A stretch of 63,973 nt of DNA, counting the filler, from Octopus bimaculoides (lineage: Eukaryota): assembly GCF_001194135.2 (NCBI RefSeq). It is 7 parts of 6 records of this genome, joined end to end, with 100 filler letters (N's around TTAATTAATTAA, not from the genome) between each part and the next. Parts side by side here need not be neighbours in the genome. Positions count along the whole stretch, not along the records: positions 17,570 to 36,696 come from NC_069003.1; 6 more parts are not named here. One strand, written 5' to 3'. The notes beneath the pieces were generated by a model. It was not told where the DNA came from. It did no database searches and was given only the letters and a program-made list of their open reading frames with translations. Within the stretch, counting starts at the first letter, position 1, and each line of letters starts with the position of its first letter. This document shows positions 21,765 to 26,642 of this stretch, piece after piece. The position numbers and the translations under genes were made by a program.

Positions 21765-21877
21765 TCATCTAATAGTTTTCAAGAAGGAAATCGGCGAGAA
21801 GAGGTTCTCTTGTGATCCTTTACGTAAACATGGGAAACAATCCCATAAACACATGATCTCATCTGAACCTGCCGAAG
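21765..21877 (-). CDS. cdc20-like: Cdc20/Fizzy-family WD40 protein, terminal coding exon with IR tail
   Basis: Acceptor ttttttgcttcctttcatttcAG; phase 1 joins the previous exon in frame. Translates (A)[36 protein letters not shown], matching ASAAADETLRLW and the C-terminal IR motif. Confidence 0.93.
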
Positions 21878-21914
21878 CTGAAATGAAAGGAAGCAAAAAA
21901 TTAGTAAATAATAA

Positions 21915-22515
21915 AAAATTCTTTCTACTATAGGCACAAGGCCTGAAATTTGAGGGGAGGGGACCAGTCGATTAGATCGAACCAGTACGCAACTGGTACT
22001 TAATTTATNNNNNNNNNNACTGAAAGGATGAGAGGCAAAGTCGACCTCGGCCGAATTTGAACTCAGAACGTGGTGATGAGGGGAAATACTGCTCAGCCTT
22101 TTGTCCGGCGTGCTACCGATGCTGCCAGCTCGCCGCCTTAATAATAATAATCTTTTCTATTCTAGGCACAATGCCAAAAATTTGGTGGGAGGGGACCAGT
22201 CGATTAGATCGAACCAGTACGCAACTGGTACTTAATTTATTGACTCCCGAAAGGTCGACCTCGGCGGAATTTGTACTCAGAACGTAAAAATAATAAAATC
22301 GATAATAATGGTTTCATATTTTGCCACAAGGGCAGCAATTTTGTGGGGAGGAGATCGATTACACCGACCCTAGTGTTCAACTGGTACTTATTTTATCGAC
22401 CCAGAAACGATGAAAGGCAAAGACGACCTCGGCGGAATTTGAACCCAGACCATAAAGACAGACGAAATACCGCTAAGCATTTCGCCCGGTGTCCTAACGT
22501 TTCTGCCAGTTCGCC
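21915..22515 (-). mobile_element. Three head-to-tail SINE family C copies in the last intron of the cdc20-like gene
   Basis: Repeated GGCACAAGG..AAATTT..GGGGAGGGG..AGTCGATTAGATCG..GTCGACCTCGGCGGAATTTG units at about 21915-22140, 22150-22290 and 22305-22515. Confidence 0.85.
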
Positions 22516-23437
22516 AATATGGAGATTGAAGAACAACAGTTGAGCAAGGGGGCTCGTCCCTGTGATGGAATAAGGTTGCTGCTGGACCTGTGGGATTCCT
22601 TGATTGACCCCTAGTTTGATTGCATCATAGTTGTACTAACAATTTATCTGTGTACTTTTATCCTATCTCTTCCCTTTCTTTTCCCCCCACATCTCGTATA
22701 TAAACTCTTGCACGATTTGTAGACTGTCCTCTTAACGTCTCCTTTATCTGATGTCCTTGTGGCAAATTATAGAAATTATTATTATTGTCATTATCATGTC
22801 GGCTTTTAGTGTAGTTTGTTTTGTGTTTGTTTTGTGGGGGGGGGGGGGTTCATCCAAACCTCATGTGTTTTTATTAAGGAAATATCATTTTGTGTCAGTT
22901 TCAATATCCTGCTAATTGTGAACTGTCACTGGAAACTGATTTAAACAGGATTTTGACAACTTAGAAGAAAACAGAAAAAGCAAGAGATAAAAATAAAAAA
23001 AGAGAAAAGAAGAAGAGGATAATGGGGGGAAAATATAAAGGAAAAACAAAATAAGAGAATGCAAACACTGAGAGAAATAGGAGAGGAAAAGGAGAAGAAA
23101 CGAAGATGACGAGAAAGAGAGAAGAAATAAGGAGATGAAGTGTAGGAGGAGAGGTGGGGGGAATGGAAAACCATATACATGTAGTGTATAAATAAACAGC
23201 TAAATAAAATGGAAGCTATTTAATTCTAATTACCAATTACTGAGACGACTAATCGTCAAATATATTATAAACAATAATAAAACAGGCGAAGAGTGAGATA
23301 TTTAATAAAGCAGAGAAATACTTAATAAAGTTATGCCATCGGTGTTTGATATCAAATAATCACCGTTAAAATATATTGATATGACATGCAGCTGTGTCTG
23401 TAAGAGAGTGTGTGTCTGACCGTATGTGTGAGTTTTA

Positions 23438-23483
<46 letters not shown>

Positions 23484-23587
23484 CACACACACACATTACA
23501 TTTAGAAACAGTCGCCATATACATAAATATATATATATATATACTCACACACAGATTACATCTAGGAACAGTCGGTGTGTGTGTATG

Positions 23588-23624
<37 letters not shown>

Positions 23625-23720
23625 CGACTAACACACATATACACACTACATTTTAAAACAGTCATATGCATATATACATGCACACACTACAAATGTTTCT
23701 CTCATNNNNNNNNNNTATAT

Positions 23721-23751
<31 letters not shown>

Positions 23752-25145
23752 TTACATTTAGAAACAGTAGCTATATACATAAATATACACAGATATATAT
23801 ATATATATATATATAGCGACTAACACATACATATACACACACTACGTTTTAAAACGGTCGTTATATGCATATAGACATGCACACACTACAAAAGTTTCTC
23901 TCTCTCTCATACATATACACATATATATATATTAGATATGACTTCTTCAGAATTTAGTATTTATTCAGAGAATCGGCGATTACGTGTGCAAGAGTGTTTG
24001 AATGTCAGTGTATAAAATAATTCCGTAAATAGTTTTATGTTTTTCTACACTTACATACATACATATACATATATATATACACACATGCACAAAATTACAC
24101 CATACTACAAGCTCAAAATGAAATTAAAACACACACACACACACACACACAACTGCGGACACACAAATAACACACCTCTATATGCAATTTGAATGCGAGT
24201 AGTGTTATGTGGTTAAGCAGTTTGCTTCGAAACCTTGTGTTTCAAGTTCGATTCCATTGTGCAACAGATTCCATCATAAACACCGGTTGGCCAATGTGTT
24301 GCGCGTCCAATGTAACTGACGGACACCGCGCAGTAGCTTGAAATGTGTGCATAACAGAGAAGAAATACGTTTAAATTTTTTTTTATTTGTATCGCTCTGC
24401 CCAAGCGAAACAAAGAGTGAGAGCGCGCGTGCGCGCGTGCGCGTGCGTGCGTGCGCGCGTGCGTCCTCTACCACTACTTGACAACGGGGTGTTGATTTGT
24501 TACGTGCCCCGTAACTTAGTGGTTCACCAAAGAGCCCAATAGAATATATACCAGACTTTAAGATAAGTGCTGGGGGTAGATTTGTTCTACGTGTTTTGCG
24601 TATGTGTGTCGGCACGCGTTTTTCGCGTGGGCGCATGGCTGCGTGCGCGTGTACGCGTTTACGTGTGTGTGCGCGTGTGCGTTCTATCTTGTTCTTCGAC
24701 TGCCCTTCATGTGGTCACGCTTGTTTGCGTGCATGGGTCTGCGTGAGTATGCGCCCGCTTATATGTGCGAGAGTATATGCTTTTGTCTGAGTGCGTGTGC
24801 ATGCATATGAGCGCATGTTTATGTGCATGCATGTGCGCATATTTGTGAATGTGTGCGATCCTGTGCATGCGTGTGCATACGCGTGGTGTTTGTGTGTGTG
24901 CACGCACACACACAAATATGGTTGCATGGTTAAGAAGTTTGCATGACAGGCACATGGGTCGCACGTTCGGTTCCACCGCGCTGTGTTTTCTATGATAATC
25001 GTTATGTAATCTCAAAAAGTATGACCTAGCGATTCGATTAAAAATAGGTAAAACAAAAAAAAAACCTGAGACTGAGGTGTTTTGTAACGTCCACCTGCAT
25101 CGTGGCCACAGATGTGTGTCTATGAAGGCAAAGAAAATATATTAC

Positions 25146-25332
25146 CAAGAGTGGAACCCGATGGGCTGAGCGCCAGATGGAGTGGTTTCGCTTCGTGCTG
25201 TCGTAGTGTGCCCACTAATTCGTAATTATCAGGAGTACGATCCTTCCATATGGCAATAAGATTCGGGAAGTTGGTACCAGCAAGCGCAGTTACGAGTTCT
25301 TTGTAATCTGACGACCATAAAAGATTGCAGAC
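25146..25332 (-). CDS. cdc20-like: Cdc20/Fizzy-family WD40 protein, penultimate coding exon
   Basis: Acceptor ttctctttgactctgcAG, donor GTaata; 187 nt, phase 0/1. Translates [62 protein letters not shown], matching Cdc20 VCSILWSPHYKELIS...IWK...H...LTMSPDG. Confidence 0.93.
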
Positions 25333-25570
25333 CTGCAGAGTCAAAGAGAAGAAGAGATTTTTAGTCAAGAACCTGGGAGCCTCGTATGAACTTCAGATCC
25401 TTCTGAAGATTAAACACCGATACGAGTTTGGGGGAATATCTTATCCGGGCGGATTCAGTATAAGCTCTCGGCTAACTGCTATGGTCAGTCATTATAATAT
25501 GTTGTGTATAAAATAAGCTTCGTGGATGTACAAGTGGCTATACTCTTTATTATTACTTTATACTCTTTAT

Positions 25571-25627
<57 letters not shown>

Positions 25628-25628
<1 letters not shown>

Positions 25629-25669
25629 ACTGTCCGATGAACGGGAACGTGAAACTCAGAGTAACGGTT
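25628..25669 (+). ncRNA. Minimal type I hammerhead ribozyme-like motif (U4C variant)
   Basis: AACTGT-CCGATGA-ACG GGAA CGT-GAAA-CTCAGAG-TA-ACGGTT: stem I 6 bp, core CCGAUGA, stem II 3 bp with tetraloop, GAAA, short near-palindromic stem III, GUA triplet. Confidence 0.65.
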
Positions 25670-25774
25670 TTTTTGTTATATTTCTGCTGCTTTCAAATAA
25701 AGCATATTACTCTACCTCTGGTATTTGAGTACTCTTTTTTCCACCTTGTTGCACATTTCATGTGCTTACTCCGG
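25628..25774 (+). mobile_element. ~147-bp hammerhead-bearing element between (TA)n tracts, probably derived from a Penelope-like terminal repeat
   Basis: Non-microsatellite segment bounded by TA repeats on both sides and starting with the hammerhead fold. The Penelope link is inferred from the known association of minimal hammerheads with these elements. Confidence 0.45.
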
Positions 25775-25795
25775 TATATATACACACACACACAC

Positions 25796-25834
<39 letters not shown>

Positions 25835-26516
25835 GGTCTAACGTTTTGCCAACTCGCCATGGTCGTTTCTGGTTCAATCCCACTGCGTGGTACTTTCAGC
25901 AAACTTTTTTCTACTAGCCGCAGGCCTATAAAACAGAGTGGATTGATAAACGGAAACTAAAAGAAGCCCTCCGGGTGTGTGTATGTATTAGGTACATATG
26001 TGCGTGTGTGTGTGTGTTTACCCGTGCCTTGAATTCCCATATTGGTTGTAAACAAGCGTCCCCGTTATGCAACCGATGCCGTTTGCAATAAATAAGTCTT
26101 TTTATGAGAAAATTTTACTTTGCTTGGAATCGAAACCGTTGGCGACAGGAACGATACCCGGCCGTATGAAAATCTGACTCAACGAATTCTGTGTGAACCA
26201 TGCAAGCAGGAAAAAGGCGACGTTGAGATGACGATATCTAAAGTCACTGAGTTGCCAAATGCGAAAGCTTTTTAAACTTTAATATACACCACAAAAGAGA
26301 GAGAAATCATCTAATTAGCGAGTTCATGAGAATTATTAAATTAAAAATGACTATATTTTACAAAATTTTTACAATATTATTTCCAAAATACTGAAATATT
26401 TTCTAGAGAGCGTTAACGCGCGAGGTGGAGTGAAGAGCGAAGTGAAAAACGAGGTGGAGTGAAGAGCGAGCGAGAGATAGAGTAAGTGAGTGAGGGTAAA
26501 GCTGTTTTTATCTCAC

Positions 26517-26642
26517 CTTGGAATTCACTGTAGTTTCCCGGAGCATTTTCCCTGTTGGAGCATGCCACAGTTTTATCGATCCATTCGTTTCATACCCTCC
26601 AGTTGCCAAAACATTTGAGCGCCATGGACACCATGCTAAAGC
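26517..26642 (-). CDS. cdc20-like: Cdc20/Fizzy-family WD40 protein, internal coding exon (third from last)
   Basis: Acceptor tttttttgttAG, donor GTgaga; 126 nt, phase 0/0. Translates [42 protein letters not shown], matching the recalled Cdc20 segment [27 protein letters not shown]...SQ. Confidence 0.93.

What the first reader, a model, noticed from the sequence alone, without database searches (positions are those of the whole stretch)
21765..26642. Divergent Cdc20-family APC/C co-activator with an intact IR tail but an altered KEN-box receptor
Seen: three exons, two of them absent from the ORF track, splice in frame into WD40 blades 5-7 plus an IR* tail. Established (human CDC20 numbering, recalled): T377, Q401 and R445 help form the KEN-box pocket; E465 belongs to the D-box pocket; the IR tail binds APC3. 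Here GGGT becomes GGYE (T377E), SQ|VC becomes SK|VC (Q401K) and HTSRV becomes HEAKP (R445K, V446P), while D464, E465 and IR are retained. Inference: a third, lineage-specific activator that still docks on APC/C but has lost or changed KEN recognition. It may therefore escape KEN-based inhibitors such as BubR1/MCC, like germline-type activators (insect Cortex, yeast Ama1). It differs from vertebrate CDC20B, which reportedly lacks the IR tail.
Basis: partly seen in the sequence, partly recalled or inferred. Interest (0 to 1): 0.72.

Follow-up and report, generated by a model that had tools for sequence, protein, structure and literature searches.

The report
Divergent octopus Cdc20 paralogue, 3' end
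The window holds the last three exons of an intact, selectively constrained octopus gene for a second, divergent Cdc20-type activator of the cell-cycle ubiquitin ligase APC/C; it belongs to an undescribed mollusc-wide paralogue family and keeps its APC/C docking tail, but its pocket for "KEN" destruction signals has been rebuilt in cephalopods.

Summary
On the minus strand, exons at 26517-26642, 25146-25332 and 21765-21877 have canonical AG/GT borders. They join in frame to 141 codons plus a stop, covering Cdc20 WD40 blades 5-7 and ending ...KTIR*. Both assembly gaps lie in repeats inside the last intron, and the whole piece is collinear with an ungapped Octopus sinensis contig.

It is a paralogue. 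O. sinensis, Mercenaria, Haliotis, Potamilus and Mactra each also carry a canonical Cdc20. It is not cephalopod-specific. A clade with 100% bootstrap support in bivalves, gastropods and cephalopods shares indels, a short N-terminus with a C-box, and a private last-intron position, which is the window's exon B/C junction. That intron position and GPX-gene synteny argue against orthology with vertebrate CDC20B.

dN/dS between two octopuses is 0.08, and a cuttlefish mRNA-like contig carries the full ORF, so the gene is functional. The KEN pocket is partly altered across the clade and fully remodelled in cephalopods. Divergence is high throughout, so enrichment at the pocket is modest. APC/C docking, D-box-only or new specificity, and checkpoint escape are inferences.

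The parts
26517..26642 (-). Exon A: 42 codons, [42 protein letters not shown] (blade 5). Y17 at 26592-26594 corresponds to human G376. E18 at 26589-26591 corresponds to T377. K42 at 26517-26519 corresponds to Q401.
   Evidence: Splice borders TTAG| and |GTGAGA. tblastn E = 2e-23. The intron positions, human 359 and 401, both phase 0, are shared with canonical Cdc20.
25333..26516 (-). Intron between exons A and B, 1184 nt and microsatellite-rich.
   Evidence: GT...AG borders. Partly alignable to the O. sinensis intron.
25146..25332 (-). Exon B: 187 nt, VCNLLWSS...[19 protein letters not shown] plus the first base of the Ala105 codon (blades 6-7). K91 at 25186-25188 corresponds to R445. P92 at 25183-25185 corresponds to V446. 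It carries two loop insertions specific to the paralogue clade.
   Evidence: Borders TGCAG| and |GTAATA, phase 1. tblastn E = 3e-36. Indels seen in the alignment.
21878..25145 (-). Last intron. It contains both assembly gaps (22009-22018 and 23706-23715), SINE-like repeat copies and TA/CA arrays. Its position, human residue 458 in phase 1, is private to the mollusc paralogue clade; canonical Cdc20 and CDC20B have 440 in phase 1.
   Evidence: for gaps, repeats and collinearity. for the intron map in Octopus, Argonauta, Mercenaria and Haliotis against canonical Mercenaria and Lingula and Spea CDC20B.
21765..21877 (-). Exon C: completes Ala105, then [36 protein letters not shown] and stop. D110 at 21861-21863 corresponds to D464. 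E111 at 21858-21860 corresponds to E465. The IR tail is I140 at 21771-21773 and R141 at 21768-21770. TGA is at 21765-21767.
   Evidence: Acceptor TTTCAG|. tblastn E = 1e-20. Residue table.
26643..36696 (-). Part of the large upstream intron, containing N gaps but no coding match. The preceding exon lies beyond the edge of the piece.
   Evidence: No tblastn match to orthologue residues 1-68. The piece is collinear with O. sinensis L001 7868-20830. The preceding exon is at L001 2945-3155, about 4.7 kb past the point matching 36696.
17570..21764 (-). 3' flank of the gene (3' UTR and beyond), repeat-rich, with no further coding signal found.
   Evidence: Collinear with L001 26647-30899 at about 86% identity. 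SINE-like copies. No tRNA or Rfam hits.

Best explanation
**Shown**
- The window contains the last three coding exons of a roughly nine-exon octopus gene. The gene encodes a protein of about 460 aa, a divergent paralogue of the APC/C co-activator Cdc20.
- The paralogue arose by DNA-level duplication, since five ancestral intron positions are retained. This happened before bivalves, gastropods and cephalopods diverged.
- It is kept under purifying selection alongside the canonical Cdc20.

**Inferred mechanism**
- The protein folds as a Cdc20-type seven-blade propeller.
- It docks on the APC/C through its C-box (DR[F/Y]IPFRP, encoded upstream of the window) and through the IR tail encoded here.
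- It still binds D-box degrons. The acidic pair D177/E465 and the L176/P179 context are kept.
- It does not bind canonical KEN degrons in cephalopods. The pocket that holds the KEN glutamate (G376, T377, Q401, R445) has become Y, E/D, K/S and K/Q. The lysine contacts N329/N331 have become D/S and G.
- Cephalopod copies also lack a canonical Mad2-binding K/R-I/V-L-x5-P motif. The protein is therefore predicted to be a poor target of the mitotic checkpoint complex.
- Y376 plus an acidic residue at 377 are conserved in all five cephalopod sequences. This suggests a re-specified pocket rather than a merely decayed one.
For: **Gene structure and integrity**
- Exons, frame and splice sites.
- Collinearity with an ungapped orthologous contig.
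- dN/dS = 0.083 (22 synonymous, 7 non-synonymous differences; dS 0.26) against O. sinensis.

**Full-length relatives**
- Orthologues carry a C-box. Argonauta P0168 ends LR and cuttlefish P0158 ends VR, in place of the octopus IR tail. The octopus N-terminal model P0173 stops exactly at the residue before exon A.
- The uninterrupted 459-aa ORF on a 2049-nt Logan contig is taken as a spliced mRNA in cuttlefish.

**Paralogy**
- The canonical and the divergent gene occur together in Octopus sinensis, Mercenaria, Haliotis, Potamilus and Mactra.
- The clade has 100% bootstrap support and is never inside canonical Cdc20.
- Its members share indels and a private last intron at 458, phase 1.

**Family and fold**
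- The PDB sequence search puts CDC20 above Slp1, and Slp1 above Cdh1.
- Pfam PF24807 scores 261.7 bits against a cut-off of 200 for the Argonauta orthologue.
- The AF2 model matches CDC20/Cdh1 structures at TM 0.92-0.95 and rmsd 1.6-2.0 A.

**Receptor residues**
- Residue table.
- A decapodiform genome copy has the same GGYD / NSKVC / QHEGQP.
- Roles of the positions: the KEN-receptor mutant is HsCdh1 Q401A/R445L, and the receptor is common to Cdc20 (PMC3690534). A modelling study reports KEN contacts to G376, T377, Q401, R445, N333/N335 and D187/F188 of Cdh1 (PMC9926468).
- The motif contexts are identical between human CDC20 and FZR1.
- The C-box binds Apc8B and the IR tail binds Apc3 (PMC5717348).
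Against: **No functional data**
- There is no direct evidence for APC/C binding, degron specificity, checkpoint insensitivity or tissue of expression.

**Divergence is global**
- 35-36 of 85 deeply invariant columns are changed in cephalopod paralogues.
- Enrichment at KEN positions is only modest: Fisher p = 0.011 for Argonauta and 0.09 for Sepia.

**Docking and D-box elements vary in relatives**
- Argonauta has E465R and an LR tail. Sepia has a VR tail.

**Limits of what the window itself shows**
- C-box, D177, D184/Y185 and the Mad2-motif statements rest on orthologues and on P0173. P0173 is assigned to this gene by inference.
- N329/N331 rest on the O. sinensis orthologue.

**Other limits**
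- Bivalve and gastropod members keep Q401 and R445, so the clade as a whole need not be KEN-blind.
- The deep phylogenetic position is unresolved.
Confidence: 0.6

Rival explanations
1. It works like vertebrate CDC20B, or is its orthologue: a Cdc20-derived propeller that has left the APC/C and acts elsewhere, for example with PLK1/separase in centriole amplification in multiciliated cells.
For: The paralogue and CDC20B share N331G and R380G ('DG' motifs) and changes at T377. NJ groups the two clades in 25-35% of bootstraps. Many CDC20B sequences were recovered by the paralogue profile.
Against: - CDC20B keeps the canonical last intron at 440, phase 1, and the intron at 142, phase 1. The mollusc clade has 458, phase 1.
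- Spea CDC20B sits head-to-head with a GSHPx gene, as does the canonical Cdc20 of Lingula. This points to CDC20B as a vertebrate duplicate of the canonical locus.
- No such neighbour lies within 10 kb of the paralogue in Argonauta, Mercenaria or Haliotis.
- The mollusc proteins keep a C-box and an [ILV]R tail under constraint, whereas CDC20B lacks both.
- G at these positions is the generic WD40 consensus (my own knowledge, not tested here), so convergence is plausible.
- No mir-449/34 hit was found in the window or in L001, which hold only the last three or four introns.
Confidence: 0.1
2. It docks on the APC/C but is a non-productive occupant. It would compete with Cdc20/Cdh1 for the C-box and IR sites and so act as a natural inhibitor or buffer, not as an activator.
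For: Docking motifs are kept while a major degron receptor is lost. The N-terminus before the C-box is very short, so the canonical Cdk-site region (human T55/T59/T70) is missing.
Against: The D-box acidic pair and the L176/P179 context are conserved in most members, which is unnecessary for a pure competitor. The whole propeller is under purifying selection.
Confidence: 0.1
3. KEN recognition is retained despite the substitutions, so the protein is simply a second, fast-evolving but functionally ordinary Cdc20.
For: Degenerate KEN motifs (NEN, GxEN) are tolerated by the receptor (PMC3690534). Bivalve and gastropod members keep Q401, R445 and D184. R445K is a conservative change.
Against: In cephalopods, 6-7 of the 7 contact positions plus G376 differ, including a bulky Tyr at G376 and a charge reversal at T377 where the KEN glutamate binds. 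Q401A/R445L alone abolishes KEN-dependent ubiquitination in human Cdh1.
Confidence: 0.08
4. It is a decaying duplicate, a truncated pseudogene, or an assembly artefact that joins unrelated exons across the gaps.
For: The piece has two gaps inside the finding's coordinates. The O. sinensis RefSeq model is only 209 aa. No upstream exon is present in the piece.
Against: - dN/dS is 0.083 with an intact frame and intact splice sites in two species.
- Exon order is identical on an ungapped contig.
- The 209-aa model is cut by the start of its contig, and further upstream exons read through.
- Full-length orthologues exist in Argonauta and cuttlefish, the latter as an mRNA-like contig.
Confidence: 0.02
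5. It is the single canonical Cdc20 of octopus, with these residues shared by all mollusc Cdc20s.
For: NCBI names the orthologue 'cell division cycle protein 20 homolog'.
Against: O. sinensis has a separate 505-aa canonical Cdc20 with the standard receptor residues. Four other molluscs also carry both genes. In 0% of bootstraps does the clade fall inside canonical bilaterian or mollusc Cdc20.
Confidence: 0.01

Closest known systems
Canonical Cdc20 / Fizzy (human CDC20, S. pombe Slp1; Pfam PF24807)
   Same: It has a seven-blade propeller of the CDC20/Fz type, with best PDB sequence and fold matches to CDC20. It has a C-box in orthologues, an IR tail, and the D-box acidic pair D177/E465. Five of eight intron positions are shared.
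   Different: - Identity is about 30% over the full length (Argonauta orthologue). Over the C-terminal 141-209 aa the figure is about 46-48%, but that is against non-cephalopod members of the same paralogue clade; only the unnamed canonical-type fragment P0002 (48%) represents canonical Cdc20.
- The N-terminus is short, with the C-box at about residue 30.
- There are three clade-specific indels, and the last intron has moved from 440 to 458.
- The KEN-receptor residues are replaced. Cephalopods have no canonical Mad2-binding motif.
- It coexists with a true canonical Cdc20 in the same genomes.
Fzr1 / Cdh1
   Same: Same family and fold, with a C-box and an IR tail. The blade 4-5 loop is short, as in Cdh1.
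   Different: It scores lower than CDC20 in sequence search (98-93 against 131 bits). It groups with FZR1 in 4% of bootstraps or fewer. Cdh1 keeps the full KEN receptor.
Vertebrate CDC20B
   Same: It is a divergent extra Cdc20-like propeller with N331G, R380G and a changed T377.
   Different: [quoted passage not shown] It keeps Q401 and R445, and it keeps the canonical intron at 440. It lies next to a GSHPx gene, as canonical Cdc20 does in Lingula. Tetrapod CDC20B has lost D177 and, in frogs and mammals, E465, both of which the octopus protein keeps.
Specialised, meiosis- or germline-restricted co-activators (yeast Ama1, Drosophila Cortex and Fzr2, S. pombe Mfr1). This comparison is recalled from memory, not tested here.
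   Same: The concept is the same: an extra Cdc20/Cdh1-family activator, divergent in sequence, that retains APC/C docking motifs and is regulated differently from mitotic Cdc20.
   Different: No orthology is expected, because these arose independently.

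Membership tests
Cdc20/Fizzy-family APC/C co-activators | Seven-blade WD40 propeller of the CDC20/Fz type (Pfam PF24807) | tested here: met
   The window product matches profile positions 182-292 of 292 at E = 1e-31. This is partial, so it falls below the whole-domain cut-off. 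The full-length Argonauta orthologue scores 261.7 bits against a cut-off of 200 over positions 1-292. The AF2 model matches CDC20 and Cdh1 structures at TM 0.92-0.95.
Cdc20/Fizzy-family APC/C co-activators | C-terminal Ile-Arg (IR) tail that binds Apc3 | tested here: met
   The window ends ...FLKTIR*, aligned to human I498/R499. Relatives end in IR, VR or LR. The role of the tail is taken from PMC5717348. Binding itself was not tested.
Cdc20/Fizzy-family APC/C co-activators | N-terminal C-box DR[F/Y]IPxR that binds Apc8 | tested here: inconclusive
   It is not encoded in this piece, because the upstream exons lie beyond the edge. It is present as DRYIPFRP or DRFIPFRP in the octopus N-terminal model P0173 and in Argonauta, cuttlefish, bivalve and gastropod orthologues. 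Assigning P0173 to this gene is an inference.
Cdc20/Fizzy-family APC/C co-activators | KEN-box receptor on the top face (human D184, Y185, N329, N331, T377, Q401, R445) | tested here: not met
   The window has E, K and K at 377, 401 and 445, plus G376Y. O. sinensis has D and G at 329 and 331. Argonauta has N I D G E S K, and Sepia has D L S G D K Q. Canonical sequences are invariant DYNNTQR apart from S at T377 in two of the sequences compared.
Cdc20/Fizzy-family APC/C co-activators | D-box receptor acidic pair (human D177 and E465) at the blade 1/7 groove | tested here: met
   D464 and E465 are retained in the window. D177, L176 and P179 are retained in orthologues. The exception is Argonauta, with E465R.
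Cdc20/Fizzy-family APC/C co-activators | Physical binding to and activation of the APC/C | not testable with these tools
   This needs co-immunoprecipitation or in vitro ubiquitination assays.
Canonical (mitotic, checkpoint-regulated) Cdc20 orthologue group | Groups with canonical Cdc20 in a tree and is the only Cdc20 in the genome | tested here: not met
   It forms a separate clade with 100% support and falls inside canonical Cdc20 in 0% of bootstraps. A canonical Cdc20 is present in the same species.
Canonical (mitotic, checkpoint-regulated) Cdc20 orthologue group | Mad2-interacting motif K/R-I/V-L-x5-P (KILR region) after the C-box | tested here: not met
   Cephalopod orthologues read ENVLPLTTKNG or ENILPLTTKSG. 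The canonical O. sinensis protein reads SKIISYKAKP, and the Mercenaria paralogue still reads GKILPICSTP. The motif definition is from memory. The region is not encoded in the window.
Vertebrate CDC20B | Absence of C-box and IR tail; no APC/C binding | tested here: not met
   The window encodes an IR tail, and orthologues carry a C-box. CDC20B sequences end before the tail. The statement on CDC20B is from PMC6220262.
Vertebrate CDC20B | Gene structure and neighbourhood: last intron at human residue 440 in phase 1; adjacent GPX8-type gene | tested here: not met
   The paralogue's last intron is at 458, phase 1, in Octopus, Argonauta, Mercenaria and Haliotis. Spea CDC20B and canonical genes have 440, phase 1. 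A GSHPx neighbour is seen for Spea CDC20B and for Lingula canonical Cdc20. None lies within 10 kb of the paralogue in three molluscs.
Germline or meiosis-specific co-activators (Cortex, Ama1 type) | Expression restricted to germline or meiosis | not testable with these tools
   There is only one mRNA-like contig, from an SRA run of unknown tissue (SRR8281669).

The most novel reading that the evidence does not exclude
Cephalopods carry an APC/C co-activator whose KEN pocket has been re-specified, not merely lost. Tyr376 plus an acidic residue at 377 are conserved in all five cephalopod sequences, next to Lys/Ser at 401 and Lys/Gln at 445. The protein would therefore read a different, still unknown degron while keeping D-box recognition and APC/C docking. 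Lacking both the KEN receptor and a Mad2-binding motif, it would be blind to the spindle checkpoint. That would make it a natural, more than 250-million-year-old separation-of-function variant of Cdc20 (the age is my own estimate, not tested here). It would sit inside an older mollusc-wide paralogue family that has not been described.
Probability: 0.3. Interest if true: 0.7.

Novelty: new variant of a known kind. Interest (0 to 1): 0.5.

Why it matters
Animals outside a few model lineages are usually thought to run the APC/C with Cdc20 and Cdh1 only. This gene shows that molluscs have kept a third Cdc20-type gene since before bivalves, gastropods and cephalopods split.

In cephalopods, evolution has done what structural biologists do by mutagenesis. 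It removed the KEN receptor and the Mad2 motif while keeping the C-box, the IR tail and the D-box site.

If the protein does activate the APC/C, it would be a natural tool for three questions:
- What D-box-only recognition can achieve.
- How much checkpoint control depends on the KEN pocket.
- Whether a new degron class exists.

The work also corrects database annotation. The O. sinensis model is truncated, and the clade is labelled simply as Cdc20. In addition, it gives intron and synteny evidence that vertebrate CDC20B is a separate, vertebrate-side duplicate.

Tried and rejected
- **CDC20B orthology.** This was considered because of shared N331G/R380G and the many CDC20B hits. It was rejected on intron position 458 against 440, on GSHPx synteny, and on C-box/IR retention. 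NJ trees leave the deep branching unresolved: paralogue plus CDC20B in 25-35% of bootstraps, and paralogue plus fungal outgroup in 42-56%, which is probably long-branch attraction. No ML tree software was available.
- **miR-449/34 in an intron.** The Rfam scan of the window and of the O. sinensis locus gave nothing.
- **Gene neighbours of the paralogue.** There were none within 10 kb in Argonauta or Mercenaria, and only a ribosomal S21e gene near the Haliotis copy.
- **Upstream exons in the piece.** None were found. Collinearity shows they lie beyond 36696.
- **Contig look-ups for P0173 and P0317.** Neither is on record.
- **Tissue of the cuttlefish transcript.** The SRA run id appears in no paper.
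- **Paralogue outside Mollusca.** The unnamed 445-466-aa hits are all canonical-type. The searches are word-index limited, so absence is not proven.
- **Literature on mollusc or cephalopod Cdc20 paralogues.** Nothing was found.
- **Statistical enrichment of changes at KEN positions.** It is only modest, because the protein is divergent everywhere.
- **tRNA scan of the piece.** Negative.

Full report
**What is in the sequence**

The feature is on the minus strand. Three exons have canonical splice borders:
- Exon A, 26517-26642 (TTAG|GCT...AAG|GTGAGA).
- Exon B, 25146-25332 (TGCAG|GTC...TTG|GTAATA, phase 1).
- Exon C, 21765-21877 (TTTCAG|CTT..., TGA at 21765-21767).

They join to 426 nt, which is 141 codons plus a stop. 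The product is [50 protein letters not shown]...[35 protein letters not shown]...FLKTIR*.

tblastn with the closest database protein finds exactly these three blocks, at E = 2e-23, 3e-36 and 1e-20, and nothing else in the piece. Pfam places the product on positions 182-292 of the 292-position CDC20/Fizzy WD40 model at E = 1e-31.

**The assembly gaps**

Both gaps lie inside the exon B/C intron.
- 22009-22018 interrupts one copy of a SINE-like repeat of about 160-220 nt. At least seven copies are in the piece.
- 23706-23715 lies in a TA/CA microsatellite with a 196-nt tandem duplication.

The orthologous Octopus sinensis contig (L001, VCDQ01004494.1) has no Ns. It carries the same exons with identical junction sequences at 20831-20956, 21878-22064 and 26534-26646.

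blastn shows that the whole piece, 36696 down to 17570, is collinear with L001 7868-30899. A 2193-nt alignment runs across the 23706 gap, and a 635-nt alignment runs across the 22009 gap. The gaps therefore change neither exon order nor frame, because the exons are joined by splicing.

The same collinearity shows why no upstream exon is found. The end of the piece corresponds to L001 7868, about 4.7 kb short of the preceding exon (L001 2945-3155). The 26643-36696 stretch is intron.

**It is a live gene, and only its 3' end is here**

Against O. sinensis, the 141 codons show 22 synonymous and 7 non-synonymous differences. This gives dS = 0.26, dN = 0.022 and dN/dS = 0.083, which is strong purifying selection.

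The O. sinensis RefSeq model of 209 aa (P0001, 95% identical) starts at an internal Met only because the contig begins 2.9 kb upstream. L001 215-312 spliced to 2945-3155 reads on as LLDAERTKLIISFRSSERSHIASLAWNNTSFCSGSMAGN..., which is blade 3.

Full-length relatives were recovered:
- A 319-aa database protein (P0173) is an octopus N-terminal half with a C-box (DRYIPFRP). It ends ...KIFAHSVTK, exactly the residue before exon A. I infer that it is this gene's 5' model, giving a protein of about 460 aa.
- Argonauta hians P0168, 458 aa, is full length.
- A cuttlefish sequence, P0158, 459 aa, is also full length. It lies as an uninterrupted ORF (116-1495) on a 2049-nt contig assembled from SRA run SRR8281669. 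I take this to be a spliced mRNA.
- A further decapodiform genome contig (L005) carries the same exons.

**Paralogue, not the canonical Cdc20**

A search with a canonical bivalve-type Cdc20 returns a canonical, roughly 505-532-aa Cdc20 in the same species that carry the divergent gene:

| Species | Canonical | Divergent |
|---|---|---|
| Octopus sinensis | P0317 | P0001 |
| Mercenaria | P0269 | P0054 |
| Haliotis rubra | P0267 | P0159 |
| Potamilus | P0270 | P0165 |
| Mactra | P0278 | P0167 |

In Mercenaria the two genes are 44 Mb apart on one chromosome.

The divergent proteins are about 445-460 aa. They come from cephalopods, bivalves (Mercenaria, Ruditapes, Mactra, Potamilus, Sinanodonta, Tegillarca) and the gastropod Haliotis. 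Against their own profile they score at least 553 bits. The best canonical Cdc20 scores 371 bits.

NJ bootstraps over 309 WD40 columns, with three distance corrections, gave the following:
- The clade has 100% support.
- The cephalopod subclade has 100% support.
- The clade falls inside bilaterian or mollusc canonical Cdc20 in 0% of replicates.
- It groups with human FZR1 in 4% or fewer.

The deep position is unresolved. The clade joins CDC20B in 25-35% of replicates and the fungal outgroup in 42-56%, the latter probably through long-branch attraction.

Independent characters define the clade:
- A short N-terminus, with the C-box at about residue 30.
- A 7-residue deletion in the blade 4-5 loop.
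- Two small insertions, in the GFA-QNQ loop and the PTM-AKV loop, both encoded in window exon B.

Most telling is a private intron position. Positions are given as human CDC20 residue, with phase in brackets.

| Gene | Intron positions |
|---|---|
| Canonical Cdc20 (Mercenaria, Lingula) | 64(1), 142(1), 185(1), 251(0), 282(2), 359(0), 401(0), 440(1) |
| Spea CDC20B | 142, 185, 251, 282, 359, 401, 440 |
| Paralogue (Octopus, Argonauta, Mercenaria, Haliotis) | shares 185, 251, 282, 359, 401; last intron at 458(1) |

The 458(1) intron is the window's exon B/C junction (GSTL|ASAG).

So the gene arose by DNA-level duplication before the bivalve, gastropod and cephalopod split. No member was seen outside Mollusca, but the searches are not exhaustive.

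**Relation to vertebrate CDC20B**

CDC20B shares N331G and R380G with the mollusc clade. In both cases the result is a 'DG', which is the generic WD40 consensus (my own knowledge), so convergence after loss of constraint is plausible.

Three lines of evidence argue against orthology:
- The last intron is at 458 in the mollusc clade and at 440 in CDC20B.
- Spea CDC20B lies head-to-head with a GSHPx gene, and so does the canonical Cdc20 of Lingula. This suggests CDC20B is a vertebrate duplicate of the canonical locus.
- No such neighbour lies within 10 kb of the paralogue in three molluscs.

No Rfam family, and so no mir-449/34, is found in the window or in L001. These hold only the last three or four introns of the gene.

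CDC20B ends without an IR tail in my alignment. It is reported to lack canonical APC/C-binding domains and not to bind APC/C (PMC6220262).

**Receptor residues**

What the literature says about these positions:
- He et al. (PMC3690534) use HsCdh1 Q401A/R445L as the KEN-receptor mutant. They state that the mode of KEN recognition is common to Cdc20.
- A modelling study on Cdh1 (PMC9926468) reports that the KEN Glu contacts Q401, T377, R445 and G376. The Lys contacts N333/N335. The Asn contacts D187, R445 and F188.
- These residues sit in motif contexts identical to CDC20 D184, Y185, N329, N331, G376, T377, Q401 and R445.

Residues at D184, Y185, N329, N331, T377, Q401 and R445:

| Group | Residues |
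|---|---|
| All 15 canonical animal Cdc20s and a fungal Slp1 | D Y N N T Q R (S at T377 in the jellyfish Rhopilema and the fungal Slp1) |
| Bivalve and gastropod paralogues | D F D G (S/L/A) Q R |
| Sepia | D L S G D K Q |
| Argonauta | N I D G E S K |
| Octopus (O. sinensis orthologue for 329/331, window for the last three; 184/185 not covered) | - - D G E K K |

In addition, G376 is Tyr and 377 is acidic in all five cephalopod sequences (GGYE or GGYD).

The D-box side is kept. D464 and E465 are in the window, and D177, L176 and P179 are kept in orthologues. The exception is Argonauta, with E465R.

The tail is IR in Octopus, VR in Sepia and LR in Argonauta.

One caveat matters. The protein is divergent everywhere. 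35-36 of 85 columns invariant across canonical Cdc20, Slp1 and FZR1 are changed in cephalopods, and 14 of 36 in the window region. The concentration of changes at KEN positions is therefore only modestly significant (5/5, p = 0.011 in Argonauta; 4/5, p = 0.09 in Sepia).

**Fold**

An AlphaFold2 model of the Argonauta orthologue has a propeller at pLDDT around 90, with disordered N-terminal and tail segments. Its 28 best PDB matches are all Cdc20, Slp1 or Cdh1, at target-normalised TM 0.92-0.95 and rmsd 1.6-2.0 A for the crystal structures.

**How it most likely works**

Shown:
- An intact, constrained and, in cuttlefish, apparently transcribed Cdc20-family paralogue.
- The window encodes blades 5-7, the D-box acidic residues and the IR tail.

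Inferred from established APC/C structural biology (PMC5717348: the C-box binds Apc8B and the IR tail binds Apc3):
- The protein docks on the APC/C and presents D-box substrates.
- It cannot bind canonical KEN degrons in cephalopods.

Cephalopod copies also lack a canonical Mad2-binding motif. They read ENVLPLTTKNG where the canonical protein reads KIISYKAKP (the motif definition is from memory). The paralogue also lacks the N-terminal Cdk-site region. It is therefore predicted to be poorly controlled by the mitotic checkpoint complex.

Conservation of Y376 and an acidic 377 since the octopod-decapod split hints at a re-specified pocket.

Rival readings are listed with their evidence: a non-APC/C role like that of CDC20B, a non-productive APC/C occupant, retained KEN binding, a pseudogene or artefact, and the canonical orthologue. 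The last two are effectively excluded.

**Novelty and verdict**

- The gene is present in databases under generic Cdc20 names ('cell division cycle protein 20 homolog', 'cdc20.4/20.5-like').
- A full-text search found no paper on mollusc or cephalopod Cdc20 paralogues.
- I rate it a new variant of a known kind.
- It is a real and fairly interesting finding. Its identity is settled, but its proposed function (KEN-blind, checkpoint-insensitive, possibly new specificity) is still an inference.
- Whether it is a 'third' activator was not checked, because no octopus Fzr1 was retrieved.
- The species of the window is not given. It is an Octopus other than O. sinensis (93% CDS identity).

Noticed in passing
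window 17570-17728, 17794-17952, 18328-18495 (inverted), 20865-20975, 21914-22100, 22146-22314, 22369-22527: A SINE-like interspersed repeat of about 160-220 nt has at least seven copies in the piece, at 76-89% identity. Further copies are scattered in the O. sinensis locus. ARAGORN finds no tRNA gene in the piece. The gap at 22009-22018 lies inside one copy, within a cluster of three.
   Followed up: partly
window 23400-24150, 25570-25830, and 24420-24900: The introns hold dense (TA)n and (CA)n arrays, with a 196-nt tandem duplication (23520-23663 and 23716-23859) around the gap at 23706-23715. There is also a GC-rich (GCGTGC)n-like tract. These produce many spurious long low-complexity ORFs in the ORF list.
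   Followed up: partly
L001 (O. sinensis VCDQ01004494.1) 215-312 and 2945-3155: The RefSeq model of the O. sinensis orthologue (209 aa) is N-terminally truncated. An upstream blade-3 exon splices in frame to the exon holding the annotated start Met, and the gene runs off the start of the 48.9-kb contig.
   Followed up: yes
P0173 (octopus N-terminal model), residues about 214-247: This model replaces the conserved blade-3 exon (LLDAERTKL...SFC) with unrelated sequence (QVDPATTCNRCRINSAADVYSVVDDVFLC). This is probably a mis-predicted exon. It also stops at the exon before the window's exon A, so the gene appears to be split between two partial models.
   Followed up: partly
L007 (Spea bombifrons CDC20B) 1-1002 and L008 (Lingula anatina canonical Cdc20) 1-601: A glutathione-peroxidase (GSHPx) gene lies head-to-head with vertebrate CDC20B and also with the canonical Cdc20 of a brachiopod. 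This suggests an ancient GPX-Cdc20 gene pair, and that CDC20B is a vertebrate-side duplicate of that locus.
   Followed up: partly
Alignment of CDC20B proteins (P0207, P0210, P0211, P0229, P0219 against sharks P0189, P0194): All five tetrapod CDC20B sequences have lost D177 of the D-box acidic pair (D177H). E465 is also lost (E465G) in frogs and mammals but kept in the reptile Rhineura. Shark and sawfish CDC20B-like proteins keep both. All of them have N331G and T377M. CDC20B therefore seems to have lost its degron receptors stepwise.
   Followed up: no
P0168 (Argonauta hians orthologue): This is the most derived member. All seven KEN-contact positions are changed. It also has E465R at the D-box site, AIAWYPLRS instead of ALAWCPWRS, and an LR tail. 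The gene spans 11.7 kb, against more than 24 kb for the last four exons alone in Octopus.
   Followed up: no
L003 and L006 (Mercenaria mercenaria CM038761.1): The canonical Cdc20 (7.80 Mb) and the paralogue (52.04 Mb) lie on the same chromosome. This could be a remnant of an old intrachromosomal duplication.
   Followed up: no
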